64,000 nucleotides of DNA from Chiloscyllium plagiosum (taxonomy: Eukaryota): positions 102,540,124-102,604,123 of the forward strand of contig NC_057713.1 in NCBI RefSeq assembly GCF_004010195.1, in the 5' to 3' direction. Under the pieces are notes generated by a model, which saw only the letters and a program-made list of their open reading frames with translations, searched no databases and was not told the DNA's origin. The translations under genes were made by a program, and so were the position numbers. Positions 6,080 through 63,625 of this stretch are shown here, in pieces (the stretch's first letter is position 1; each line of letters begins with the position of its first letter).

Positions 6080-6288
6080 GGAGAAAGTGAGGACTGCAGA
6101 TGCTGGAGATCAGAGCTGAAAATGTGTTGCTGGAAAAGTGCAGCAGGTCAGGCAGCATCCAGGGAACAGGAGAATCGACATTTCGGGCATCGACGTTCCT
6201 GAAGAAGGGCTTATGCCCGAAACGTCGATTCTCCTGTTCCCTGGATGCTGCCTGACCTGCTGCGCTTTTCCAGCAAAACATTTTCAGC
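6080..6288. mobile_element. Hairpin mini-element of two inverted Penelope terminal repeats, with TSD
   Basis: 76-bp inverted arms 6115-6190 and 6213-6288; duplication (GC)ACTAAGTAAGTTCA at 6064-6079 and 6287-6302. Confidence 0.88.
6199..6226 (+). ncRNA. Minimal hammerhead ribozyme motif (Penelope type)
   Basis: CTGAAGA-A-GGGC-TTAT-GCCC-GAAAC-GTC: both conserved core boxes, 4-bp stem II, palindromic ACGT stem III, GUC triplet. Stem I is weak. Confidence 0.6.
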
Positions 6289-15300: not shown

Positions 15301-17317
15301 TGAGCAAACCCCAACTCAGGAACAACCAGTGCTGAGAGTCTGATCCAACTCATTCCAAGCGTCATTTGATTTCCGTTTTGTTCTCGTGTTTTTCTTCCCC
15401 TGCGGTCTCTCAGAGTTCAGTATACACTTGGAAACTTGAGGTTCAGGCTCGGAATGCAGAGATGTCCAAAAAATGTCTGACCCCAAGGGATTATGGAGAG
15501 CCTGTTACAAAGGCAGTACCTTACATTTATGTAGCACCTTTAATATGGTAACATACCCCAATGCCCCGGGTTGGAACATCCATACTGCCGGCCCGCTCTG
15601 GGTTCTTATAAAGTGAACAGCGGCCTCTAAGCTATAAGGAATAAGCAAACTCCTTACAGATGACCAGATCTTTACTGACAAATCGTTTGATTCTGATAAG
15701 TAAATGCAGTAAAATAATAAACGCAACAACAGAAATTGCTGGAGAAACTCAAGTCTGGCAGAATCTGTGCAGAGAAAACAGTAATTTTTCGAGTGCAGTG
15801 ACCCTTCAGAACTTTTTAAGTTGGTTGTTTATTTAACAGTCTAAAAATCATATACCCCGAGACACTCTCCCTTTGCGGATGTGTAATTTACATTCATGGA
15901 AAAGCAAGCGAGTTTCTGAATACTTTCAGCTTTGCTGATTCTGGCTCTCGAGCCCATTGCAAGAAACAGAAATTGTCAGAAACTGACAAAGAAGCCAGCC
16001 ATGTTGGAAAAGTTCGTTTTTAGTCCCTGTAGCCCTTTTGATAGGGACTGCGCTGCATGGTTGCCGCTGTCTGAGCAGCCAACTTCAGCAAGAACCCAAA
16101 TATCTGAGTAGGCTAATGGAATAGGCCGTGCTTTATCACCAATCGGGGAATAGGCAGAAGTTGAACAATACAAGGCACAACTCTGGGAGTTCAGGTTTAG
16201 TGACACCACTCAAAGTAAGTGAAATGACTCAGAATCAATCCTAATGTTTACGCTTTATTGATAATGACGATGTCACTCTCGGTAATTGTCCACAGATAAA
16301 TAAAATACCAGTTAAACTGATTTACAGTCACGGACTTCTCGACCTGGCTGTGTTCTCTAGCTAGACTGAATACAATGAGGCCCCTATTTGCAGATCGATC
16401 GCTCGTCAGCAAATCGCTGTGAGACTGACAGTCACTAGGGTAAAGGAGCTTGTCCCCGTTTCTGTCGCATTTTATGAAACGAGATTCTATAATCTTGAGA
16501 TTTCAGGACTGGGAGGACTGAAACGTCTGCTACTTTCTGCAACGAGCTCAGAACGGACTTCTCACACAATAGCCAAATATTCGAAACAAAAACAAAACAG
16601 ACAAAAACTCAGCAGGTCTGGCAGCATCTGTGGCGAAAAAGCAAAATTAACGTTTCTTCAGAACTTCAGAAGAGTCATTACACCCGAAACATTCATTTTG
16701 CGTTCTCTCCACAGATGCTGCCAGACCTGCTGAGTTTTTCCTGCAATTTCCGTTTTGCGTCTGATTTCCACATTTTTTTTGGTTTTCAGCTAAATATTCC
16801 GCCTTTAGATTCCAGATTCAGTTCATTCTCCGGCTCGGTCACAGGCTTTCAACTCTTCTGTCTCGGGGAGTGGGGAGGATTAGGTAGAACCGGTTGGAAT
16901 TACTATTGATGCTGCAACCAAATATTTGAAATATTGAAAAAAATCAAATATTTATGTTCGCTATTTTCATCTTTCTATTCTCTCCCGTGTCCTGGGACCT
17001 ATATCTATCTCTTAACCAACACTACACGAGCAGATTCCCTGTCTGAGAACTTGCTGCGCCAAACAGCCGGGCGTGTTTCCTTTTGGAACAGTCACCATCC
17101 TTTCACAGTACTGCACAGTCTCTGAAGCTTATGGAAAGTGCTGTAGCAGTACAAGTTCTAAGTGATCATTTACAAACCATTCTACAGGTTCTTCCTGCCA
17201 ATGTCTCACACATTTGCCAGCTTCGTTGCTGTTGGTTTTTGAACCGGTCTATTATATCAGAGCAACTCATTGTACAGTGTTGGTCAGCCCATTTTGTCGA
17301 ATGTAACTATAGCCGAA

Positions 17318-36982: not shown

Positions 36983-37799
36983 TCATTTACTTAAAAACAA
37001 TTTGCATTTATATCACACCTTTAATGTAATCAAGTCCTCCAAGATGCTGAACTAGAATATTATCAAACAAACTTGTCACTACCATATGAGAAAACTTGCG
37101 AATACCTGACCAAAGTTTTGGTCAAATAGGTAGGTTTTAAGAAGCGTCATAAAAGGAATGGTGGAATAGAGAAATGGAGGGGCACAGACATTTAGGGAGG
37201 AATTCCAGATCTCAGGGCATTGGTAGCTAATAGCTGCACAATTTAAAATTAGGGATGTGCAAGAGGCTAGAGGTGAAGAAGACCTTAGATCTTGAAAGAT
37301 TAGAAGGCTGGAAGAGTCAGAGTTGAGTTAATGCCATTGGAAGAATTTGAAAGAAAAATATGAGTTTTAAAATGAGATAAGGAATATTTTACAATTTCTG
37401 TCACAACTTAGTATCATCAATAATCTTCAATATTATTCCTCCAATTTCTAAGGTTAAATTTGTCTTTGGCAAACTGTGAATTGTTTTGATAAATCTGATC
37501 ATTTATGGGACTTGAAAGAAAACATACAATCTAATAGATGTTGTTAAAACTCAACTGGGATCACTAATGTCCTACAAGGAAGGATATTATTCAACCGGAC
37601 CTGGGGTGGCCTATACAGTGTGTGCAATTACCAGCATAATAGAAAGATAATTAGATCAACATAAGTAAAAACAGAAATTGCTGGAGAAACCGTGGCAGTC
37701 TGGTCTGGCAGCAACTGTGGAGAAAAGGCCAAATTAATGTTTGCAGTCCAGCGACCCTTCTTCAGAACTGAAGTCCTAATTAATAAAGCAGTGATTTCC

Positions 37800-43939: not shown

Positions 43940-45300
43940 CATCATTAATGTTGTTTCCTTGTCTCACCTGGAATTGGAAAAACTTATCAATTTGTTTCCA
44001 ATTTTCAACTCTCACCTTAACCTAGTCCATTTCTGACTCTCTCCTTTCCAGTCTCAACATCTTTGTTTCCTGTTCCTAGGGATAGGCTGGCTACTAACAT
44101 CCACTACAAACCCAGCAACTCTCACAGTTACCTTGACTATATATCCTCACACCTTGCTTTCTGTAAGGACTCTACCCCATTTCTCCCAGTTCCTCCCTCT
44201 CTGTCACATCTGTTTTGATGATGCCACCTTCCACAGAGGTCCTCAGAAATATCCACCTTTTTTCCTCAAATGATAATTCCCCATCATTGTGGTTGACAGG
44301 CCCCTCAGTCATGTTCAAACTATCTTCCCCTCTTCTGCATTCAGCCCTTCTTTTCCTCTCCCTCAACACCAATAGGGTCCCCTGGTCCTCACTTTCCAGC
44401 TCACCAGCCTCCATATCCGAGGGATCATTAGCTGTGTGAATTCCAATACCTCCAATGGGATGCCATCACCAGATGCATATCCCCTCCCAATAAGGGACTG
44501 TTCCATCCAGGACACCTGATCCACTTCTCCTCCACTCTCAACACATCCCAACATTCACAGGTCACCTGGCTGTGTAACCACAGAAGGTATAAAACCTGCC
44601 TGTTTACTTCCTTCCTACTCGCTATCCAAGATGCACCTTCCAGGTGAAGCGGCAATTTACCGACACTCGACTCAATCTAGTCTACTGCATTCACTGTTCA
44701 CAATGTGGTATTCCCTACAATGGGGAGATGAAATGCAGACTGGGCAACTGCTTTGCAGAATACTTATGTTCTCTCCGTAAGAATGAATCTGAGCTTCTGG
44801 TTGATTGTCACTTCAACACACCACTGCGTTCCGTGGCAAATATTTCCATCCCAGACCTGTTGTGCTTTAGTGAAGGTCAGAGCAAGCTGGAAGAACAGCA
44901 TTTCATTTTCTACTTGGGGTCACTGCAGTCTCAGGACTCAGTATTGAGTTGAATCATTTTAGGGCTCAAGTACCTTCTTCCAAGTCCTTACCCCAACTTC
45001 CACACACCAATCTGTGTCATCACATCCCTTCACCACAGTCAACCCATTTTCACCCACTAATGGTCTCCATTAGCAACTTTTCTTTCTCCCTGGCTCGCCA
45101 TTATCCATTTCTTTCTCTGTTATTCACTCTCTCTGGGTTCCACCACCACTTACCTTTGTCTTCATCATATATGCCAACCTTTTCCTAGTCATTATCACTT
45201 CTGAAGAAGGGTCCATGGACTCAAAATGTTAACTCTGTTTCTCTCTCCACAGATGCTGCCGGATCTTGAGTTTCTACAACAATTTCTGTTTTTTGTTTCA
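43940..45300 (+). mobile_element. Old Penelope-like element, 3' fragment
   Basis: NLVYCIHCSQCGIPYNGEMKCRLGNCFAEYL...HFN; terminal repeat with CTGAAGAAGGGTC at 45201. Confidence 0.82.
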
Positions 45301-45829: not shown

Positions 45830-48363
45830 GGTCAGTGAGGGGGAGAGAGAAAGAATGGACAGGACTGGCAGCTTAATGTTCCAGGATACAAATGCTATAG
45901 GAAGGATAGCAAGGAGGGAAAAGAGGAGTGGGAGAGGTATTTCTGATAAGCAATAGCATTATTGCTGTGCTTAGGGAGGAGATTCTTGGGAATGCATCCA
46001 GGGAACTGAGAAATAACAAAGGGATGATTATCTTATTGAGTTTGTATTATAGACACCCCCCCCCCCCCCCCCCTCCCCAATAGGCAGCGGGAAATTGAGA
46101 AGCAATTTTGTAAGGAGATTTCAGTTATCTGTAAGAATGATAGGGTAGTTGAGCTCGGGGGTTTTAATGTCCAAACATAGACCGGATCTAAAAGTTGAAA
46201 TTCTAAATTGGAGGAAGGCCAATTTTGATGGTATTGGGCAAGAACTTTCAAAAGCTGATTGGGGGCAGATATTCTCAATAAAGCGATGGCTGGAAAGTGG
46301 GAAGCCTTCAAAAATAAGATAGCAAGAGTACAGAGAATGTATATTCCTGTTAGGGTGAAAGGAAAGGCTGGTAGGAGTAGGGAATATTGGATGACTAGAG
46401 AAATTGAGGTTTTGGTTAAGAAATAGAAGGAAGCAAATGTCAGGTATAGACAACAGAGATTGAGTGAATCCTTAGAAGAGTATAAAGGCAATAGGAGTGT
46501 ACTTAAGGGGGAAATCAGGCAGGTAAAAAGGGGACATGAGATAGATTTGGCAAATAGGGTTCAGGAGAATCCAAAGGGATTTTATAAATATATTAAGGAC
46601 AAAAGGGTAACTAGGGAGAGAATAGGGCCTCTCAAATATCAGCAAGAAAGCCTGTGTGTGGAACCACAGGAGATGGGGGAGATACTAAACGAGCATTTTG
46701 CATTTATATTTACTGTGGAAAAGGACATGGAAGATATTGGATGTGGGTAAACAGATGGTGACATCTTGCAAAATATCCATATAACAGAGGAGGATGTGCT
46801 GGATGTCTAGAAATACATAACAGTGGATAAATCCCCAGGACCTGATCAGGTGTACCCGACAACTCTGTGGGAAGCTAGGGAAGTGATCGCTGAGATATTT
46901 GTATCATCGATAGTAACAGGTGAGGTGCTGGAAGACTGGAGGTTGGCTAACTTGGTGCCAATGTTTAAGAACGGTGGTAAGGATAAACCAGGGAACTATA
47001 GACCAGTGAGCCTGATGTCGGTGGTGGGCAAGTTGTTGGAGGGAATCCTGAGGGACAGGATGTACATGTATTTGGAAAGGCAAGGACTGATTAGGGATAG
47101 TCAAAATGGCTTTGTGCATGGGAAATCATGTCTCACAAACTTGATTGAGTTTTTTGAATTAGGAACAAAGAGGATTGATGAGGGCAGAATGGTGGACGTG
47201 ATCTATTTGGACTTCAGTAAGGCATTTGACAAGGTTCCTCATGTGAGCCTAGTTCACAAGTTTACATCTTATGGAATACAGGGAGAACTAGCCATCTGGA
47301 TACAGAACTGGCTTGAAAGTAGAAGACAGAGGGTGGTGGTGGTGGTGGACAGTTGTCTTTCAGACTGGAGGCCTGTCCAGTGATGTGCCACAAGGATCGG
47401 TGCTGGTTCTACTGATTTTCATCATTTATATAAATGATTTGGATTTGAATATAGGAGATGTAGTTAGTAAATTTGCAGATGACACCAAAATTGGAAGTGT
47501 AGTGGACAGCAAAGAAGGTTACCTCAGAGTACAATGGAATCTTGATCAGATGGGCCAATGGGCTGAGGAGTGGCAGATGTAGTTTAATCTAGATAAATGA
47601 GAGGTACTGCATTTTGGAAAGGCAAATCAAAGCAGAACTTATACACTTAATAGTAAGGTCCTGGGAGTGTTGCTGAACAAAGAGACCCTGGAGTGCAGGT
47701 TCATAGTTTCTTGAAAGTGGTGTCACAGGTAGACAGGATAGTGAAGAAGACATTTGGTATGCTTTCCTTTATTGGTCAGAGCATTGAGTATTGGAACTGG
47801 GAGGTCATGTTGCAGCTATACAGAACATTGGTTAGGCCATTTGTCGAATATTGCATGCAATTCTGGTCTCCCTCCCATCAGAAGGATATTATGAAACTTG
47901 AAAGGGTTTAGAAAAGGATGTTGCCAGGGTTGGAGGATTTGGGGTGTGGAGACAGGTTGGGATTGTTTTCCCTGGAGTATTGGAGGCTGAGGGGTGACCT
48001 TATTGAGGTTTATAAAATCATAAGGGGCACAGATAGATATTTTCCCTGAGGTGGGGGAGTTCTGAACTAGAGGGCATAGATTTAGGGTGAGAGGGGAAAA
48101 ATTTAAATGGGACCTAAGGAGCAACCTTTTCATGCAGAGGGTGGTGTGTGTATGGAATGAGCTGCCAGAGGGAGTGGTGGAGGATGGTATAATTACAAAG
48201 TTTAAAAGGCATCTGGATGGGTATATGAATAGGAAGGGTTTGGAGGGATATGGGCCAGGTGCTGGCAGGTTGGACTAGATTGTGTTGGAATATCTGGTCG
48301 GCATGGACGAGTTGGACCAAAGGGTCTGTTTCCTTGCTGTACATCTCTATGACTCTCTGACTC
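45830..48363 (+). mobile_element. CR1 LINE, 5'-truncated, degenerate ORF2
   Basis: NYRPVSLMSVVGKLLE, DFSKAFDKVPH, FADDTK, tail. Confidence 0.95.
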
Positions 48364-48689
48364 TTTAGTGCACCCTCAATTAATGAATACTCTAACATGA
48401 CAAACTTCATGGTACAACATGTTTAGGACTTGATTAATTGGAACTGGCTCAGAGCTGAGAAAGTGGATCAGATTTTGTGATGAGACTTTAAATCAAGCTT
48501 TCCTCTTCCCTCAGAAGGTTTAGCAGCACCACTAGAAGATGATTCCTCAATCAATACCTGGTTGTTTTTGGATCCTGGTGTACACAAATACTGCAGTGAT
48601 TTCTGTTGGAGGTATTCTGGGGCTGCTGCATAATGCAGTGCATCTGTACATTTCATTCAGAATGGGCAAATGCTATAGTTTATTGCAGG

Positions 48690-49645
48690 GGAATTCTGGC
48701 GAAGTTCGATGATGATAGAAAGTTAGGTGGAAAGACAGGTAGTTCTGAGGAGGTGGGGAGGCTACAGAAAGATTTAGACAGCTTAGGAGAATGGTCCAAG
48801 AAATGGCTGATGAAATTCAATGTGAGTAAATGCGAGGTTTTGCGCTTCAGAAAAAAAGAACACAGACATGGACTATTTTAAAAATGGTGAGAAAATTCAT
48901 AAAGCCAAAGTACAAAGGGATCTGGGAGTGCTAGTACAGGATTCTCTAAAGGTTGTCTTGCAGTTTGAGTTTGTGGTTAAGAAAGCAAATGTAATGTTGT
49001 CATTTATTTCAAGAGGGTTGACATGTAAAAGCAGCGAGGAGCTACTAAGACTTTATAAAGCTCTGGTTAGGCCCCATTTAGAATACTGTGTCCAGTTTTG
49101 GGCCCCACACCTCAGGAAGGACATACTGAAGAACGTCTAGTGGAGATTCACACAGATGATCCCTGGAATGGTAGGCCTAACATAAGATGAATGGCTGAAG
49201 ATCTTGGGATTGTATTTGTTAAGAGTATAGGAGGTTGAGGGGAGGTCTAATAGAAACTTACAAGATAATGCATGGCTTTCCCAGGGTGGACGCTGGGAAA
49301 TTGTTTCTGTCAGGTGGGGATACTAGGACCGTTGGGCACGGCCTTTGAATTAGAGGAGGTCAATTTAGAATGGAAATGAGGTGACATTTCTTCAGCCAGA
49401 GAGTGGTGGGCCTGTGAAATTCATTGCATTGGAGTGCAGTGGAGGCCGGGATGTTAAATGTCCTCAAGGCAGAGATTGATAAATTCTTAATCTCCCAAGA
49501 AATAAAGGATATGGGGGTGGGGGGGGGGGGGTGGGGGGAGTGCGGGTCAGTGGCATTGAAATGCCCATCAGTCATGGCTGAATGGCGGCGTTGGCTCGAT
49601 GGGCCGAATGGCCTTACTTCCACTCCTATTTCTTATGGTCTTATG
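48690..49645 (+). mobile_element. CR1 LINE 3' part (different, older subfamily)
   Basis: AKFDDDRKLGG...LQKDLDSLGEW...LYKALVRPHLEYCVQFWAPH; tail tcttatggtcttatg. Confidence 0.88.
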
Positions 49646-49814
49646 GGCAGGGAGGAATCATTTCGGTGAATGCGGATTCTCAGCAGCTTCTGCTTAAGTA
49701 AGGAATTCGATATTGCGTGAGCTCACTGGTTGTGATGGAGATGACAAGTGTCATTAGAACAAAGAGCTGCGGGTGCTGAAGATCTGAAACAAAGAAAAGA
49801 GATACAGACATTGC

Positions 49815-49954
49815 TGGTGAAACTGAGCAGACCTGGCAGCACCTGTAGGAAAAAAGCAGACTTAACCTTTCGAGTCCGTCGTCGTCAGCAGTTTGTGTTT
49901 TTGTCATCCGTGTCATTTCCTGTCGCAATATATTTCACCCACTTCTCAGACCAG
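49815..49954 (+). repeat. Left arm of inverted duplication (contains the V-A promoter)
   Basis: Reverse complement of 50769-50906 with a few substitutions and a 2-nt indel. Confidence 0.93.
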
Positions 49955-49969
49955 CCAACAGCCAGAGAC

Positions 49970-50015
49970 ATGCAGATCCAGTTAACGCTCATCGTGTCTG
50001 TAATGTATTTCTCCT
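49970..50015 (+). CDS. TRGV: TRGV segment A, leader exon
   Basis: MQIQLTLIVSVMYFS+T|GTAGGT, phase 1, 81-nt intron to the V exon. Confidence 0.85.
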
Positions 50016-50096
50016 GTAGGTACTTCAGGTTTCATTCGTTTTAAACAACACATTCTCCTGCAATATTGATAATTGTCATCTTTCTTTTTCAAACAG

Positions 50097-50407
50097 GTGG
50101 TGGCTTAGCTCAATCCTTGACTCAGGCCAAGCTCTCGGTCAGCAGGGCTCGCACAAAAGTCGCCCGTTTTCGGTGCATCTTGGAGAATGTGGATCTGGTG
50201 AGTGGAACCGTGCACTGGTACCGCCACACTCCGAGCCAGGGTTTCCACCGCATTCTCTACGTGACAGGAGCCCGACCAATTTACGACGGCGATTTCGCCG
50301 ACAGATTCACATCCGAAAACGTGCCGAAAGAGAAAAGCAGTCTGCTTGACCTAACAAACATTGCGGATAGCGACGCTGGAGTTTATTACTGTGCCGTCTG
50401 GAGTGAA
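50097..50407 (+). CDS. TRGV: TRGV segment A, V exon (intact)
   Basis: Acceptor tttctttttcaaacag, then (C)GGLAQSLTQ...RFRCILENVDLVSGTVHWY...RILY...DAGVYYCAVWSE. IgV C-W-C triad, TRGV-type HWY and YYCAxW motifs, followed by an RSS. Confidence 0.92.
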
Positions 50408-50446
50408 CACGGTGACATATGACCGTAGAACAGCTCTACAAATACT
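50408..50446 (+). other. Recombination signal sequence, 23-bp spacer (V-A)
   Basis: CACGGTG - 23 nt - ACAAATACT. Confidence 0.92.
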
Positions 50447-50768
50447 CCGCACGTCGAGAGCTCTCCTCCCAGACGAGGGAACAGGGTCCAGTGAACAGTG
50501 TTCAGTTGAGAATAAATTACTAAATCGTCTTAAACCTGCCTTCTAACAATATGGGTTTAAACGCACGTTTGAGTCCCCTAATTCTTTCACTAAAATATCC
50601 CAAACACGAGAGTGATAAACGGTCTATGGCGGAGCAAGGATTTAGAGTCGGAATGGCCGGAAACAAGTATTTTAATAGTTAATCCTGTAAACTCCTCAGT
50701 TTGTCCAGAAATACACTGCAGTCCGCACTCATCATGTTTTAGCAGATTTTCATATTGAAATCTTCATT

Positions 50769-50906
50769 CTGGTCTGAGAAGTGGGTGAAATATATTGCGA
50801 CAGGAAATGACACGGATGACAAAAACACAAACTGCTGACGACGGCGGACTCGAAAGGTGAACTGCTTTTTTCCTACAGGTGCTGCCAGGTCTGCTCAGTT
50901 TCGCCA
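50769..50906 (-). repeat. Right arm of inverted duplication (antisense copy of the V-A promoter)
   Basis: ctggtctgagaagtgggtgaaatatattgcgacaggaaatgacacgg... is the reverse complement of 49815-49954. Confidence 0.93.
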
Positions 50907-51252
50907 TTCCCTGTCGGCAACTCTCTCCAGGGTTTCCCCACCATCCTGCGACTTGGTTCCCGCACCTTTAGTGGCGTAAACCGCTTCTCCCAATAAAACA
51001 CGCAGCCGAAACTTTTGTCCCTGAAAGTTTTCGGGAACTCGTCTCGTTCTTGTTTCACGCGGTTTACTATCTGTCCCCTAATCTCGGTGTTACCGACATT
51101 TCATGTTAATATTTTATTGCAATTTGTTAATCCCCCAACACTGTATTCTCGACTATCGTGACAATGCAATGCAAACCAGTGGTTTGTTGGCTCTCCATTC
51201 ATGCTCCGTTTCCTGAGGCTGATCCCAAACTGAGTATCAGAACAAATCCTGA

Positions 51253-51271
51253 CGCCGCCAGGGGGAGCCAC
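51253..51271 (+). promoter_or_regulatory. CTCF-like binding motif (forward orientation)
   Basis: CGCCGCCAGGGGGAGCCAC, about 0.8 kb 3' of the V-A RSS. Confidence 0.5.
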
Positions 51272-51589
51272 TATCACGCCGCTTAAAGTCGAAATTACAT
51301 AACTAAATCTCGTGCAGAATCAGATTGCGTTTAACAAATAAAAAATAGTCCATTTAAAATGTTTAATTCAAAATTCTAGTTGAAAAGTGCAGAGATTTCT
51401 GCGTTCTAATCAACGGCCCAAAATCACAACTGCTGATTAGGAGCTCCACAAATAGGCAGCCCTCCTGAGGTATCTCTCGGACTGGAGGATCACTTAACAT
51501 TTCAGCAGCGGACCCGCACACCCTGTGTGGATCAGGCGATGTTTGAAAATGATGAGTGGAGTTTCTGCATGCTCCTTCTGCTACTTGCG

Positions 51590-51780
51590 TTTGGCGGAAT
51601 CGGCGGGAGATGCTATAAATACGGGTTGACTACGTCTTCTCCAGCATGGGAGGAGTGGGCGAAGGATTTCTACAAGTCGGCAGGATCTTGAATTTTTCAG
51701 GGAGGATGTGAGGGCATCCTTGAAGAGTTTTCTCTGCCTTCTAGTAGGTGCTTGCCAAGATGGAGCTTGGGCTAGCAACT
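51590..51780 (-). mobile_element. RTE-clade LINE C-terminal remnant
   Basis: RRQRKLFKDALTSSLK resembles the RTE motif GGQRKRFKDTLKASLK. Confidence 0.55.
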
Positions 51781-52044
51781 TCTTTGTCTGTGTATTCATT
51801 CGTGCGATCTGGGCATCGCTGGTTAGCCAGCATTTATTGCCCATCCCGAGTTACTTTGAGAAAATGGTGATGAGCTGCATTCTTGAACTGCTGCGGTCCA
51901 CATGCAGCGAATTGACCCACAATGTCATTCGAAAGGGAATGACAGGATTTTGACCCAGTGACAGTGAAGGAAGGGCGGTATATTTCAAGCTCAGGATGGG
52001 GAGTGGTTTGGAGGTGAGTTTGCAGGTGGTGATGTTCCCATTTA

Positions 52045-55000
52045 TCATAGAGTCATAGAGCCATAGAGATGTACCGCACAGAAACAGACCCTTCGGTCCA
52101 ATTCGTCCATGCCAACCAGATATCCCAACCCAATATAGTCCCACCTGCCAGCACCTGGCCCATATCCCACCAAACCCTTCCTATTCATATACCCATCCAG
52201 ATGCCTTTTACATGTTGCAATTGTACCAGCCTTCACCACTTCTTCTGGCAGCTCATTCCATACATGTACCATCCTCTGCGTGCAAACGTTGCCCCTTAGG
52301 TCTCTTTTATATCTTTCCACTCTCACCCTAAACCTATGTCCTATAGTTCTGGACTCCCCAACCCCAGGGAAAAGACTTTGTCTATTTATCCTATCCATGC
52401 CCCTCATGATTTTATATACCTCTATAATGTCACTCCTCAGCCTCTGATTCTCCAGGGAAAACAGCCCCAGCCTATTCAACCTCTCCCTATAGCTCAAATC
52501 CTCCAACTTTGGCAACATCCTTGTAAATACTTTCTGAACCCTTTCAAGTTTCATAACTTTCTGATAGGAAGGAGACCAGAATTGCATGCAATATTCCGAA
52601 AGTGGCCCAACCAATGTCCTGTGCAGTCGCAACATGACCTCCCAACACCTGTACTCAATACTCTGACCAGTAAAGGAAAGCATACCAAATGCCTTCTTCA
52701 CTATACTATCTACCTGCAACTCTGCTTTCAATGAGCTATGAACCTGCACTCCATGGTCTCTTTGTTCAGCAACATTCCCTAGGACCTTACCATTAAGTCT
52801 ATAAGTCCTGCTAAGATTTGCTTTCCCAAGATGCAGCACCTCTCATTTATCTGAATTAAACTCCACCTGCCACTTCTCAGCTCATTGGCCTATCTGATCA
52901 AAATCCCATTGTAAACAGAGGTAACCTTCACTGTCCACTATACCTCCAACTTTAGTGTCATCTGCAAACGTATTAATTATACTTCTTATGCTCAGATCCT
53001 AATTATTTATATAAATGATGAAAAGTAGTGTACCCAGCACCAATTCTTGTGGCACTCCACTGGTCACAGGTCTCCAGTCTGAAAAACAACCCTCCACCAT
53101 GACCCTCTATCTTCTACCTTTGAAACAGTTCTATATCCAAATGGCTAGTTCTTCCTGTATTCCATGAGATCTAACCTTTCTAACCACACTCCCACGGGGA
53201 ACCGTGTTGAACGCCTTAATGAAGACCATATAGATCACTCCTACTGCTCTGCCCTCATCAATCCTCTTTGTTACTTGTACAAAAAAATGCAATCAAGTTT
53301 GTGAGACATGATTTCCCACACACAAAGCCATGATGACTATCCCGAATCAGTCCTTGCCTTTCCAAATACATCCTGCCCCTCAGGATTCCCTCCAACAACA
53401 TGCCCACCACCGATGTCAGGCTCACTGGTCAATAGTTCCCTGTCTTGTCCTTACCAGGTAAAAACAAAGACTGCAGATGCTGGAAACCCGAGTCTGAACT
53501 GGAGTGGTGCTGGAAAAGCACAGCAAGTCAGGCAGCATCCAAGGAGCAGAAAAATTGACATTTTGGGCAAAAGTCCTTCATCAGGAATAGAGGCAGGAAG
53601 CCTGCAGGGTTAAGAGATGTCCTTACCACTCTTCTTAAACAGTGACACCACGTTAGCTAACCTCCAGTCTTCCAATACCTCACCTGTGACTATCGATGAT
53701 ACAAGTATCTCAGCAAGAGGCGCAGCAATCATTTGCCTCACTTTCCTCAGAATTCTAGGGTACACCTGATCAGGTCCTGGGGATTTACCCACTTTTATGC
53801 ATTTCAAGACATCCAGCACTTTCTCCTCTGTAATGTGGACATTTTTCAAGATGTCACAATCTATTTCCTTACATTCCAAATCTTCCAAGTCCTTTTCCAC
53901 AGTAAATACTGATGCAAAATACTTGTTTAGTATCTCCCCCATCTCCTGCAGCTCCACACAAAGGCTGCCTTGCTGATCTTTGAGGGGCCCTATTCTCTCC
54001 CTAGTTACCCTTTTGTCCTGAATGTATTTTTAAAAACCCTTTGGACTCTCCTTAACTCTATTTGCCAAAGCTATCTCATGTCCCCTTTTTGCCCTCCTGA
54101 TTTCTCTCTTAAGTATACTCCTACTGCCTTTATACGCTTCTAAGGATTCACTCGATCTATCCTGTCTATACCTGACGTATGCTTCCTTCTTTTTCTTAAC
54201 TAAACCCTCAATTTCTTTAGTCATCCCCTATACCTATATATAGGTATATATAGATATTTCCTATACCTACCAGTCTTTCCTTTCACCCTAAGAGGAATAT
54301 ACTGTCTCTGGACTCCTGTTATCTCATTTCTGAAGGCTTACCATGTTCCAGCTTTCCCTTTACCTGTGAACATCTGCCCCCAATCAGCTTTTGAAAGTTC
54401 TTGCCTAAAACCATCAAAATTGTCCTTTCTCCAATTTAGAACTTCAACTTTTAGATCTGGTCTATCCTTTTCCATCACTATTTTAAATCTAATAGAATTA
54501 TGGTCACTGGCCCCAAAGTGCTCCCCCACTGACACCTCAGTCACCTGCCCTGCCTTATTTCCCAAGAGGAAGTCAAGTTTTGCTCCTTCTCTAGTAGGTA
54601 CATCCACATACTGAATCAGAAAATTTTCTTGGAGACACTTAACAAATTCCTCTCCATCTAAACCTTTAACACTATGGCAGTCCCAGTTTATGCTTGGAAA
54701 ATGAAAATATCCTCACTTAATTATTCTTACAGATAACTAAAATCTCCTTACAAATTTGTTTCTCAATTCACCTCTGACTATTAGGGGATATATAATACAA
54801 TTCCTATAAGGTGATCATCCCTTTCTTATTTCTCAGTTCCACCCAAATAACTTCCCTGGATGTATTTCTGGAAATATCCTCCCTCAGTACCTCTGTAATG
54901 CTATCCATTATCAAAAATGCCACTCCCCCTCACGTCTTGCCTCCTTTTCTTTCCTTCCTATAGCATTTATATCCTGGAACATTAAGCTGCCAGTTCTGTC

Positions 55001-55706
55001 CATCCCTGAGCCATGTTTCTGTAACTGCTCTGATATCCCAGTCCCACAATCCTAACCATGACCTGAGTTCATCTGCCTTCACTGTTAGGCCCCTTGCATT
55101 GAAATAAATGCAATTTAATTGGTCAGTCCTACCTTGTTCTTTGCTTTGTCCCTGACTACCCTGACTGTTTGACCTGCTTCTGTTCTCAACACTACCAGTC
55201 TTAGATTGATCTCTTTCCTCACTATTTCCTGGGTCCCACCCTTACTACACACACATTCCCTCTCCCCTACCTTACTAGTTTAAGTCCTCCTGAGCAGCTC
55301 TAGAAAATCTCCCTGCCAGTATACTAGTACCCTTCCAATTTAGGTGCAATCGGTCTTTCTTGTACAGGTCACGTCTACCCCAAAAGAGATTCCAATGATC
55401 CAAAAATGTAAATACTTCTCGCATATACCAGCTCCTCAGCAATGCATTCATCTGCTCTATCCTCCTATTCCTGCCTTCACTAGCTCATAGTACTGGGAGC
55501 AATCCAGATATTACTACTCTCGAGGACACCCTTTACACTTCCTGCCTAACTCTCTGTAATCTCCCTTCAGAATCTCAACCTTTTCTCTTCCTATGTCATT
55601 GGTTCCAATGTGTACAATGACCCCCTGCTGTCCCCTCTCTCCCTTGAGAAGATTCTGCACTCTCTCTGAGACATCCTTGATCCTGGCAGCAGGGAAGTGA
55701 CACACC
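52045..55706 (-). mobile_element. Long CR1 LINE including the ORF1 esterase end and degenerate ORF2
   Basis: ORF1 VCHFPAARIKDVSERV...VIVHIGTNDIG (SGNH esterase); ORF2 EN and RT fragments; tail at 52045; inserted into the older LINE family. Confidence 0.95.
53457..53617 (-). mobile_element. Solo Penelope terminal repeat inserted in CR1, 11-bp TSD
   Basis: TGTCCTTACCA at 53446-53456 and 53618-53628; degenerate hammerhead core on the minus strand. Confidence 0.88.
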
Positions 55707-62660: not shown

Positions 62661-62871
62661 GCTGCGGGGTGAGGGAGGAAGAGATTAGAATATCATCAGC
62701 CATTTGAGGGAACACAAAATGAGAGACATGGCAGATAAACTGCATCAAGACAATTCATCACGAGCCCCTAGCGGTATTGTTTTGCGTTGTCTATATTCAG
62801 GATGCGAATCATTTCCTGTTTAATTATCCGGTTTAACACAGTGAATGCAGCCTTCTCATCATTGCTGCACC

Positions 62872-62914
62872 ATGTCGTTCCATTGTCTGGTTTGTCTGTT
62901 GATGCTTTCCCCCA
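62872..62914 (+). pseudogene. TRGV-type leader exon (orphan of a deleted V, or alternative leader for V-D)
   Basis: MSFHCLVCLLMLSP+A|GTGAGT, same length and phase as the V-C leader, preceded by the shared promoter motif. An acceptor 84 nt downstream (ctctccag, 62998) is followed by non-V sequence. Confidence 0.65.
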
Positions 62915-63333: not shown

Positions 63334-63625
63334 GTGAACATTTTGCCGAGGTCTTGAGACAGTCACCAATATCGATCACTAGGCCCAAGACATCAACAGT
63401 CAAAATACGATGTGTCACACAACACGCGGTAACTATCCACTGGTACTAACAACAGTCCGACCAGGCGCCTCGAAGGATAATTTATTTCAGCAAAAGCGGC
63501 GTTCTGCTGGATCCGGGAATCCCCTCTAAGTTCTCAATTGAGAAAAGTGTTTCTTCATTCTTCCTTGTAGTTGATAACATTGAACGGTCTGATGCTGCCA
63601 TCTATTACTGTGCCTATTGGATCCC
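63334..63625 (+). pseudogene. TRGV: TRGV segment D, V exon pseudogene
   Basis: EHFAEVLRQSPISITRPKTSTVKIRCVTQHAVTIHWY*QQSDQAPRRIIYFSKSGVLLDPGIPSKFSIEKSVSSFFLVVDNIERSDAAIYYCAYWI; single TAA at 63447-63449 where Gln (CAA) is expected. Confidence 0.9.

What the first reader, a model, noticed from the sequence alone, without database searches (positions are those of the whole stretch)
49815..50906. First TRGV segment is bracketed by a ~140-bp inverted copy of its own promoter
Seen: 49815-49954 ends 15 nt before the leader ATG and contains the TCATTTCCTGT motif and an AT-rich TATA-like stretch. It recurs in reverse at 50769-50906, about 320 bp after the RSS, with only a few substitutions and a 2-nt indel. 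The copy spans both a repeat-derived part and unique promoter sequence, so it is a local duplication rather than two independent insertions. Inference: (a) an antisense promoter aimed back through the RSS and V exon (convergent germline transcription that could affect accessibility or AID targeting), which would be deleted once V-A rearranges; (b) the scar of a staggered-break inversion; or (c) a cassette that could flip by recombination between the arms.
Basis: partly seen in the sequence, partly recalled or inferred. Interest (0 to 1): 0.8.

Follow-up and report, generated by a model that had tools for sequence, protein, structure and literature searches.

The report
Inverted promoter copy beside V segment
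A T-cell-receptor V gene segment really is bracketed by an upside-down 138-base copy of its own upstream region, but this looks most like a small DNA-repair scar and there is no sign yet that it acts as a backwards promoter.

Summary
Arms 49815-49954 and 50769-50906 are inverted copies: 3 substitutions plus one 2-nt indel, with the inner 75 nt identical.

The right arm is not an assembly artefact. Contigs from another DNA run of the same organism and from a related organism carry it in the same context.

The left arm is the original:
- It continues a dispersed hairpin-repeat copy across its outer edge.
- It keeps the V-promoter motif at the usual distance from the leader ATG.

The right arm starts in mid-repeat and carries about 62 nt that are unique in the window. 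It is therefore a secondary, locally templated inverted insertion. It is neither a second transposon insertion nor the footprint of a staggered-break inversion.

RNA contigs show a spliced germline sense transcript. It begins inside the left arm, reads through the RSS and mostly ends about 65 nt before the right arm. Nothing points to an antisense start, but there were no stranded data. Between organisms A and C the right arm diverges like its flanks.

Verdict: a real, probably neutral scar. The antisense-promoter idea is untested, not refuted. The scan's notes hold nothing like it on other DNA.

The parts
49815..49954 (+). Left arm: the original 5' flank of V1, made of the outer part of a hairpin-family repeat plus unique promoter-proximal sequence
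   Evidence: repeat continuity across 49815
50769..50906 (-). Right arm: 138-nt inverted secondary copy of the left arm, 322 nt after the RSS
   Evidence: X5 record 23 (50769-51400, 0 differences) and X17 record 15 (50687-51312) carry it in context
49758..49892 (+). Copy of a dispersed hairpin-type repeat family (approximate limits). The arm starts 57 nt into it
   Evidence: nhmmer family model positions 2-77 = 49804-49879. Alignment with other copies extends to about 49892. 44 contigs of X5 begin to fit at 49758 (table 7)
49913..49923 (+). TCATTTCCTGT motif, shared TCAYTTCYT V-promoter motif (GGAA core on the opposite strand), 57 nt before the ATG
50800..50810 (-). Inverted copy of the same motif inside the right arm
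49925..49939 (+). AT-rich TATA-like stretch. The RNA contig of organism C already begins at 49933, inside it
49970..50015 (+). Leader exon of V1
   Evidence: spliced contig X17 record 14
50016..50096 (+). Leader intron, 81 nt, GT..AG
   Evidence: table 5 (joint 50015>50097)
50097..50407 (+). V exon (V-set domain, ends ...YYCAVWSE)
50408..50446 (+). RSS with 23-nt spacer (heptamer CACGGTG, nonamer ACAAATACT)
   Evidence: read

Best explanation
The right arm (50769-50906) is a secondary, inverted, locally templated copy of 140 nt of V1's own 5' flank (49815-49954). It was inserted 322 nt downstream of the V1 RSS. The most likely cause (inferred) is a DNA break or stalled fork at the right-hand site that was repaired by copying a short stretch of nearby DNA in the opposite orientation, by template switching or a templated insertion. 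V1 itself was not inverted. The event predates the split of organisms A and C. Since then the copy appears to drift like the surrounding non-coding DNA. It still carries the shared V-promoter motif and the region where sense transcripts begin, so weak antisense initiation is conceivable. Nothing seen here shows it, so the feature is best read as a neutral scar. Shown: the repeat, its reality in other data sets, the left-to-right direction of copying, and single-copy status of the inner part. Inferred: the repair mechanism and neutrality.
For: (1) The repeat is real: 140 columns, 96.4% identity, E = 3e-62. (2) It is not an artefact. X5 record 23 covers 50769-51400 with 0 differences at depth 28.9, the same as flanking unique DNA. 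X17 record 15, from organism C, spans 50687-51312 across both right-arm junctions. (3) It is not a dispersed repeat. The inner part has no other match in the window. Depth in X5 falls from about 2,700 over 49735-49868 to single-copy values over the inner part. (4) Direction of copying. A repeat-family model built without the arms matches the left copy at model positions 2-77 (49804-49879) but the right copy only at 13-75 (50906-50846). Similarity of the outer flanks is not above chance: 62, 393 and 992 of 2000 shuffles reach the observed score. The 2-nt gap lies in the right arm, while the left arm keeps the family's length. (5) The left inner junction is ancestral: TCAYTTCYT lies 57, 67 and 58 nt before the leader ATGs of V1, V2 and V3. 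(6) No sign of function. In organism C the right arm shows at least 8 substitutions in 138 nt against 34 in the other 488 nt of the same contig (Fisher p = 0.70). The X15 RNA contigs stop at 50676 with depth 0 over the arm. In X17, depth drops from 23.6 to 4.5 at about 50700, before the arm rather than at the mirrored start near 50790. (7) Templated insertions by template switching, and inverted ones at breaks, are known repair products (PMC8421209 and PMC11724301, search listing and start of abstracts only).
Against: No allele or species without the insertion was available, so junction microhomology and the repair pathway are untested. At 138 nt the copy is longer than the ~5-34 bp inverted insertions named in the PMC11724301 abstract. 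All 4 differences between the arms lie in the outer 65 nt and the inner 75 nt, which hold the promoter motif, are identical (p about 0.05-0.10). The arms differ less (3 of 138) than the right arms of A and C do (at least 8 of 138), although the copy is older than that split (p = 0.22). This could hint at gene conversion or constraint. The motif copy shows no listed change in organism C. RNA evidence came from contigs only, with no strand, no true ends and unknown tissue. The one raw-read RNA run laid 0 reads. Organism C's contig has depth 4.5, so some differences may be errors.
Confidence: 0.6

Rival explanations
1. The right arm is a working antisense promoter. It fires back through the RSS and V exon of the unrearranged V1, giving convergent germline transcription that tunes RSS accessibility, and it is lost when V1 rearranges by deletion.
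For: The copy contains the shared TCAYTTCYT motif intact. It also contains the mirror of 49933, where the sense RNA contig begins, so it spans roughly -118 to +22 of that point. The inner 75 nt are identical between the arms. Region 50687-51312 is present in an RNA run that shows no intron coverage. Antisense promoters inside a V region are known in mouse Igh as the PAIR elements (PMC3920468, passages read).
Against: X15 has depth 0-0.21 over 50673-50940 while the sense 3' part has 3.5-5.7. In X17 the contig over the arm continues 400 nt to its right, so transcripts run through the arm rather than visibly starting there. The depth step is at about 50700, not about 50790. The arm diverges between A and C like its flanks. 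None of the other three V-like segments found in the window has such a copy.
Confidence: 0.15
2. It is the scar of an inversion made by staggered breaks. The 814-nt interior, V1 included, was flipped and the sequence between the staggered nicks was duplicated at both ends in opposite orientation.
For: Inverted duplications of ancestrally unique sequence at both ends of a segment are the signature of that model (PMC1885836, abstract and passages read). The geometry fits.
Against: That model makes one arm-interior junction new. The left outer junction is ancestral, because repeat-family homology runs across 49815. The left inner junction keeps the promoter motif at the family-typical 57 nt from the ATG, against 67 and 58 nt in V2 and V3. 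Both junctions of one arm being ancestral leaves an insertion, not an inversion. V1 has the same orientation as the other three V-like segments in the window.
Confidence: 0.07
3. The arms are transposon-derived: two insertions of one repeat, or one native hairpin or foldback element whose loop came to hold V1.
For: The outer ~78 nt of each arm belong to a hairpin-type family with 21 model hits at E up to 10 in the window, the two arms included. Native copies have the same plus-arm, loop, minus-arm topology, for example 16604-16656/16681-16754.
Against: The inner ~62 nt are found nowhere else in the window and sit at single-copy depth in X5. The right copy is cut in mid-element. Other inverted pairs in the window, hairpin copies included, are 69-90% identical, against 96% here. 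Native loops are about 25 nt, not 814-966 nt. No target-site duplication flanks the arms (read).
Confidence: 0.05
4. The arms make V1 an invertible cassette that flips by homologous recombination, in the germline or somatically.
For: Inverted arms share 75 nt of perfect identity around an 814-nt interior.
Against: No evidence for a second orientation. The contigs used break inside the arms (X5 record 22 ends 30 nt into each arm), so orientation cannot be read. From recall, such short homology supports recombination poorly in vertebrates.
Confidence: 0.03
5. The second arm is an assembly artefact.
For: Inverted chimeras occur in long-read assemblies (general knowledge).
Against: The arms are not identical. 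The right arm with its private variants is joined to its right flank in X5, and to both flanks in organism C.
Confidence: 0.01

Closest known systems
Templated insertions / template-switch (MMBIR-type) repair products
   Same: A short stretch copied from nearby DNA, in inverted orientation, inserted at a second site, with the donor left intact in its own context (PMC8421209 and PMC11724301, listing and abstract starts only).
   Different: Junction microhomology cannot be read without an empty site. At 138 nt it is longer than the very short foldback insertions described for yeast breaks in the PMC11724301 abstract.
Inverted duplications at inversion breakpoints from staggered breaks (Drosophila; PMC1885836)
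   Same: Inverted copies of formerly unique sequence at the two ends of a segment.
   Different: Here both junctions of the left arm look ancestral, so the bracketed V1 was apparently not inverted.
PAIR elements and antisense intergenic transcription in the mouse Igh V region (PMC3920468)
   Same: It would work like these if active: a promoter inside a V cluster pointing antisense.
   Different: PAIR elements number 14 repeated units with Pax5, E2A and CTCF sites and proven antisense RNA. This is a single copy of one V segment's own promoter, with no antisense RNA shown.
Sense germline (sterile) V transcripts
   Same: [quoted passage not shown] The contigs here run 49933-50705 in organism C and 50102-50676 in organism B, through the RSS.
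   Different: This concerns the left arm's normal role, not the inverted copy.
Native hairpin repeat family of this genome
   Same: The outer part of both arms belongs to it and the plus-arm/minus-arm topology is the same.
   Different: The arms extend 62 nt into unique sequence, the right copy is truncated, and the spacer is 814 nt rather than about 25 nt.

Membership tests
Local templated inverted duplication | Near-identical copy of nearby sequence in opposite orientation | tested here: met
   140 columns at 96.4% identity, 814 nt apart
Local templated inverted duplication | Donor copy keeps its ancestral context on both sides; the other copy is an insertion | tested here: met
   Repeat-family model runs across 49815 on the left only. 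Motif-to-ATG spacing is as in V2 and V3. Outer-flank similarity is not significant
Local templated inverted duplication | Copied segment is not itself a dispersed repeat | tested here: met
   The inner ~62 nt have no other window match and sit at single-copy contig depth in X5
Local templated inverted duplication | Microhomology or filler at the junctions relative to an empty site | not testable with these tools
Staggered-break inversion scar | Inverted duplicates of unique sequence at both ends of a segment | tested here: met
Staggered-break inversion scar | The bracketed segment is inverted, so one arm-interior junction is new | tested here: not met
   Indirect, with no outgroup: the left outer and left inner junctions both look ancestral, and V1 is co-oriented with the other V segments
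Antisense germline promoter of a V region (PAIR-like) | Antisense transcripts that start at the element | tested here: inconclusive
   Unstranded contigs only, with no excess coverage left of the mirrored start. The raw-read RNA run laid 0 reads
Antisense germline promoter of a V region (PAIR-like) | Repeated element scattered through the V cluster | tested here: not met
   Single copy in the window, and none beside the other V-like segments
Antisense germline promoter of a V region (PAIR-like) | Pax5/E2A/CTCF binding | not tested
   No binding data or validated motif models were to hand
Transposon with terminal inverted repeats / foldback element | Target-site duplication and arms that are element termini present in many copies | tested here: not met
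   No direct repeat flanks the arms. The left edge lies inside another repeat. The inner part is single-copy
TCR gamma V gene segment (V1) | Leader, short spliced intron, V-set exon, 23-spacer RSS | tested here: met
   V-set E = 3e-07. The 81-nt GT..AG intron is spliced in the RNA contig. The RSS was read
TCR gamma V gene segment (V1) | Gamma chain rather than another antigen-receptor chain | tested here: inconclusive
   The best single-V-domain PDB matches are TCR gamma chains, such as 1ypz_F at 9.6e-12 and 6mwr_C and 8dfw_G at about 5e-11, but antibody scFvs score as well or better. An Atlas cluster named for a TCR gamma V region ranks 4th. Linkage to gamma J and C was not examined

The most novel reading that the evidence does not exclude
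The inverted copy is a lymphocyte-specific antisense promoter. It was born by duplication of V1's own promoter and is kept similar to it by gene conversion. It drives convergent transcription across the RSS of the 5'-most V segment and so sets how often that segment rearranges. This would be a one-off, self-derived analogue of the mouse PAIR elements in a cartilaginous fish.
Probability: 0.12. Interest if true: 0.6.

Novelty: new member of a known kind. Interest (0 to 1): 0.3.

Why it matters
If neutral, it is an ordinary small structural scar. Its main use is as a clean example in which the direction and relative age of a templated inverted insertion can be read from the sequence. If the copy is active, it is a natural experiment: a V promoter placed 322 nt beyond its own RSS and pointing back at it. 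A few stranded RNA or CAGE libraries from thymus could then test directly whether convergent germline transcription changes RSS accessibility or V usage.

Tried and rejected
- **Larger palindrome around V1.** Self-BLAST found inverted matches 45855-48364 against 52049-55003 at 71-83% identity. These carry reverse-transcriptase ORFs (RVT_1 E = 2.9e-14 for 1 of 4 ORFs tested, the other 3 without a Pfam hit). No homology links 48365-49785 with 50937-52048 apart from LINE-to-LINE matches. They are therefore separate LINE insertions and not part of the feature.
- **Arm extended to 49786/50936.** Relaxed scoring gave 170 nt at 90%. The extra flank similarity is not above shuffles and is not recognised by the repeat-family model. 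Rejected.
- **Structured RNA or hammerhead in the arms.** Rfam gave 3 chance-level matches at E of 2.8 or more in 49-52 kb, and 0 matches at gathering score in the whole window.
- **Joint 49860>50875 in X17.** This was 1 contig with side 27. I read it as another, native hairpin-family copy from elsewhere, not as a deletion of V1.
- **Raw single-cell RNA reads (X22).** 0 reads were laid, so this is no test.
- **Notes of this scan.** There is no similar finding elsewhere.
- **Literature searches.** Searches listed no paper describing an inverted promoter copy beside a V segment in a cartilaginous-fish TRG locus. This covers only the held library and those search terms. One preprint on stem-loop pairs in human antigen-receptor genes (10.1101/2023.09.25.559221) was seen in the listing only. 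No supplements were consulted.
- **Spliced model.** The leader and V exons were never joined. Only the V exon was searched.

Full report
**Observation**

- The repeat finder reports two adjoining inverted pairs: 49862-49954/50769-50861 and 49815-49859/50862-50906.
- blastn joins them into one 140-column alignment at 96.4% identity, E = 3e-62 in the 64-kb window.
- A global alignment lists every difference: 49818 T/C, 49860-61 AC/deleted in the right arm, 49864 A/C and 49879 T/C. Positions 49880-49954 are identical to 50769-50843.
- A self-comparison of the window gave 111 minus-strand matches. Fourteen are inverted pairs of at least 60 nt lying under 5 kb apart, and only this pair reaches 90% identity.

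**The gene between the arms**
- The leader runs from ATG 49970 to 50015.
- An 81-nt GT..AG intron covers 50016-50096.
- The V exon covers 50097-50407 and ends ...YYCAVWSE.
- The RSS consists of heptamer 50408-50414, a 23-nt spacer and nonamer 50438-50446.
- The exon is a V-set domain.
- Its best single-domain matches among solved structures are TCR gamma chains, although antibody fragments score similarly. An Atlas cluster named for a TCR gamma V region ranks fourth.
- I accept 'TRGV-like' but did not examine J or C segments.
- Three further V-like segments lie downstream on the same strand, at about 58997, 61135 and 63342. The last has an in-frame stop.
- I searched the V exon alone and never joined it to the leader.

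**Is the second arm real?**

Reads data were limited to one call.
- In X5, a DNA-like run of the same organism, record 23 covers 50769-51400 with no differences at depth 28.9. That equals the depth of neighbouring unique sequence, so the right arm with its private variants is joined to its right flank.
- X5 record 22 covers 49925-50798 with no substitutions. It reaches 30 nt into each arm, one short of the tool's 31-letter bridging rule.
- In X17, from the related organism C, record 15 spans 50687-51312. It crosses both right-arm junctions, with 42 substitutions and 8 gaps.
- The arm is therefore not an assembly artefact, and it predates the split of organisms A and C.
- The left outer junction is bridged by only 14 letters (X5 record 21), so that junction rests on the assembly itself.

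**What the arms are made of**
- The outer part belongs to a dispersed hairpin-type repeat. I built a model from five window copies with both arms masked out. It finds 21 places in the window at E up to 10.
- The left copy matches model positions 2-77 (49804-49879). The right copy matches only positions 13-75 (50906-50846).
- An alignment with other copies carries family homology to about 49892.
- In X5, 44 contigs begin to fit at 49758.
- The arm therefore starts about 57 nt into a repeat copy that is continuous on the left but cut short on the right.
- The remaining ~62 nt (49893-49954) match nothing else in the window. In X5 they lie at single-copy depth, whereas 49735-49868 shows about 2,700.
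- Similarity of the outer flanks beyond the arms is not above chance: 62, 393 and 992 of 2000 shuffles reach the observed score at flank lengths of 30, 60 and 90 nt.

**Direction and mechanism**
- The motif TCAYTTCYT has 10 matches in the window against 4.98 expected; 4 of 100 shuffles reach 10.
- It lies 57, 67 and 58 nt before the leader ATGs of V1, V2 and V3.
- The left arm therefore sits in ancestral context at both ends: the repeat continues outward, and the promoter spacing holds inward.
- A staggered-break inversion (PMC1885836, abstract and passages read) requires one arm-interior junction to be new, so that model fits poorly.
- What remains is an insertion of an inverted copy of 49815-49954 between 50768 and 50907.
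- I infer template switching or a templated insertion during break repair. That class of event is known (PMC8421209 and PMC11724301, listing and abstract starts only).
- Without an empty site the junction microhomology cannot be read, so the mechanism is an inference.

**Function**

The RNA evidence comes from contigs, which carry no strand information and no true ends.
- In organism C, record 14 runs 49933-50015, splices out the intron, and continues 50097-50705 at depth 23.6. This is a germline transcript reading through the RSS. No intron coverage is present, so genomic contamination is negligible.
- Depth then falls to 4.5 in record 15 (50687-51312).
- In organism B, contigs identical to the window cover 50102-50676 at depth 3.5-5.7 and nothing over the arm.
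- The mirrored position of 49933 is 50790. No step in coverage is seen there, and in organism C the contig runs through the arm to 51312.
- The right arm of organism C shows at least 8 substitutions in 138 nt, against 34 in the other 488 nt of the same contig (p = 0.70). The V1 transcript contig diverges less, 21 in 692 against 42 in 626 (p = 0.002).
- The copy therefore shows no sign of constraint between A and C.

Some points count against a purely neutral reading.
- The four arm differences all lie in the outer 65 nt (p about 0.05-0.10).
- The arms differ less (3 of 138) than the A-C right arms do (at least 8 of 138; p = 0.22).
- The motif copy has no listed change in organism C.
- The list of differences was truncated (28 not shown), and the depth of 4.5 allows for errors.
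- The single-cell raw-read run laid no reads at all.

**Comparison with known systems**
- It most resembles a small templated inverted duplication.
- If active, it would work like the antisense promoters of the mouse Igh V region (the PAIR elements). It is not a member of that family, because it is single-copy, derives from V1's own promoter and has no demonstrated antisense RNA.
- It is not a transposon with terminal inverted repeats. There is no target-site duplication, the inner part is single-copy, and the left edge lies inside another repeat.

**Verdict**

The inverted repeat is real and correctly described. Its origin is a local inverted copy of the V1 promoter region, made from left to right. 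It is probably a neutral scar (confidence 0.6 for the whole statement). The antisense-promoter reading keeps roughly 0.12-0.15 and is cheaply testable. The scan's notes hold no similar case elsewhere.

Noticed in passing
window 45855-48364 (+) and 52049-55003 (-): V1 is also bracketed by a much larger inverted pair, two LINE copies at 71-83% identity with their 3' ends facing V1. A third partial LINE copy lies at about 48600-49650. Reverse-transcriptase ORFs are present (RVT_1 E = 2.9e-14 for 46823-47380).
   Followed up: partly
window 16604-16754, 6127-6276, 15728-15798, 37670-37752, 45214-45290 and others: A hairpin-type repeat family with a ~78-nt core, often as plus arm, ~25-nt loop, minus arm. 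It gives 21 model hits at E up to 10 in the window, the two arms included, and no Rfam match at gathering score. It appears expressed in organism C's RNA run (contig giving the joint 49860>50875).
   Followed up: partly
window 49933-50705: RNA contigs from related organisms show a spliced but unrearranged V1 transcript that reads through the RSS and mostly ends about 260-300 nt after it. In X15, depth near 50383 (13.4) exceeds that of the listed contigs, which suggests extra contigs that diverge near the V end, possibly from rearranged transcripts.
   Followed up: partly
window 49645-49757: In X5 the unique stretch 49668-49734 has depth 4.7 against about 29 nearby. One contig at depth 23.4 replaces 49645-49757 with 40 other letters (side only 22). 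This is either a structural polymorphism just upstream of V1 or a look-alike locus. It is unexplained.
   Followed up: no
window 50617 and 50697: All three contig runs lack one base at 50617, and X5 lacks two at 50697. These are likely small indel errors or private variants in the assembly behind the window.
   Followed up: no
window 63342-63620: The fourth V-like segment has an in-frame stop in the tblastn alignment and is probably a pseudogene. A leader-like ATG and motif also occur at 62809-62872 without a V exon detected by tblastn.
   Followed up: no
window 49504-49547: A long G run inside the LINE 3' region. The reads tool skipped it as a repeat, and contigs seem to be cut there.
   Followed up: no
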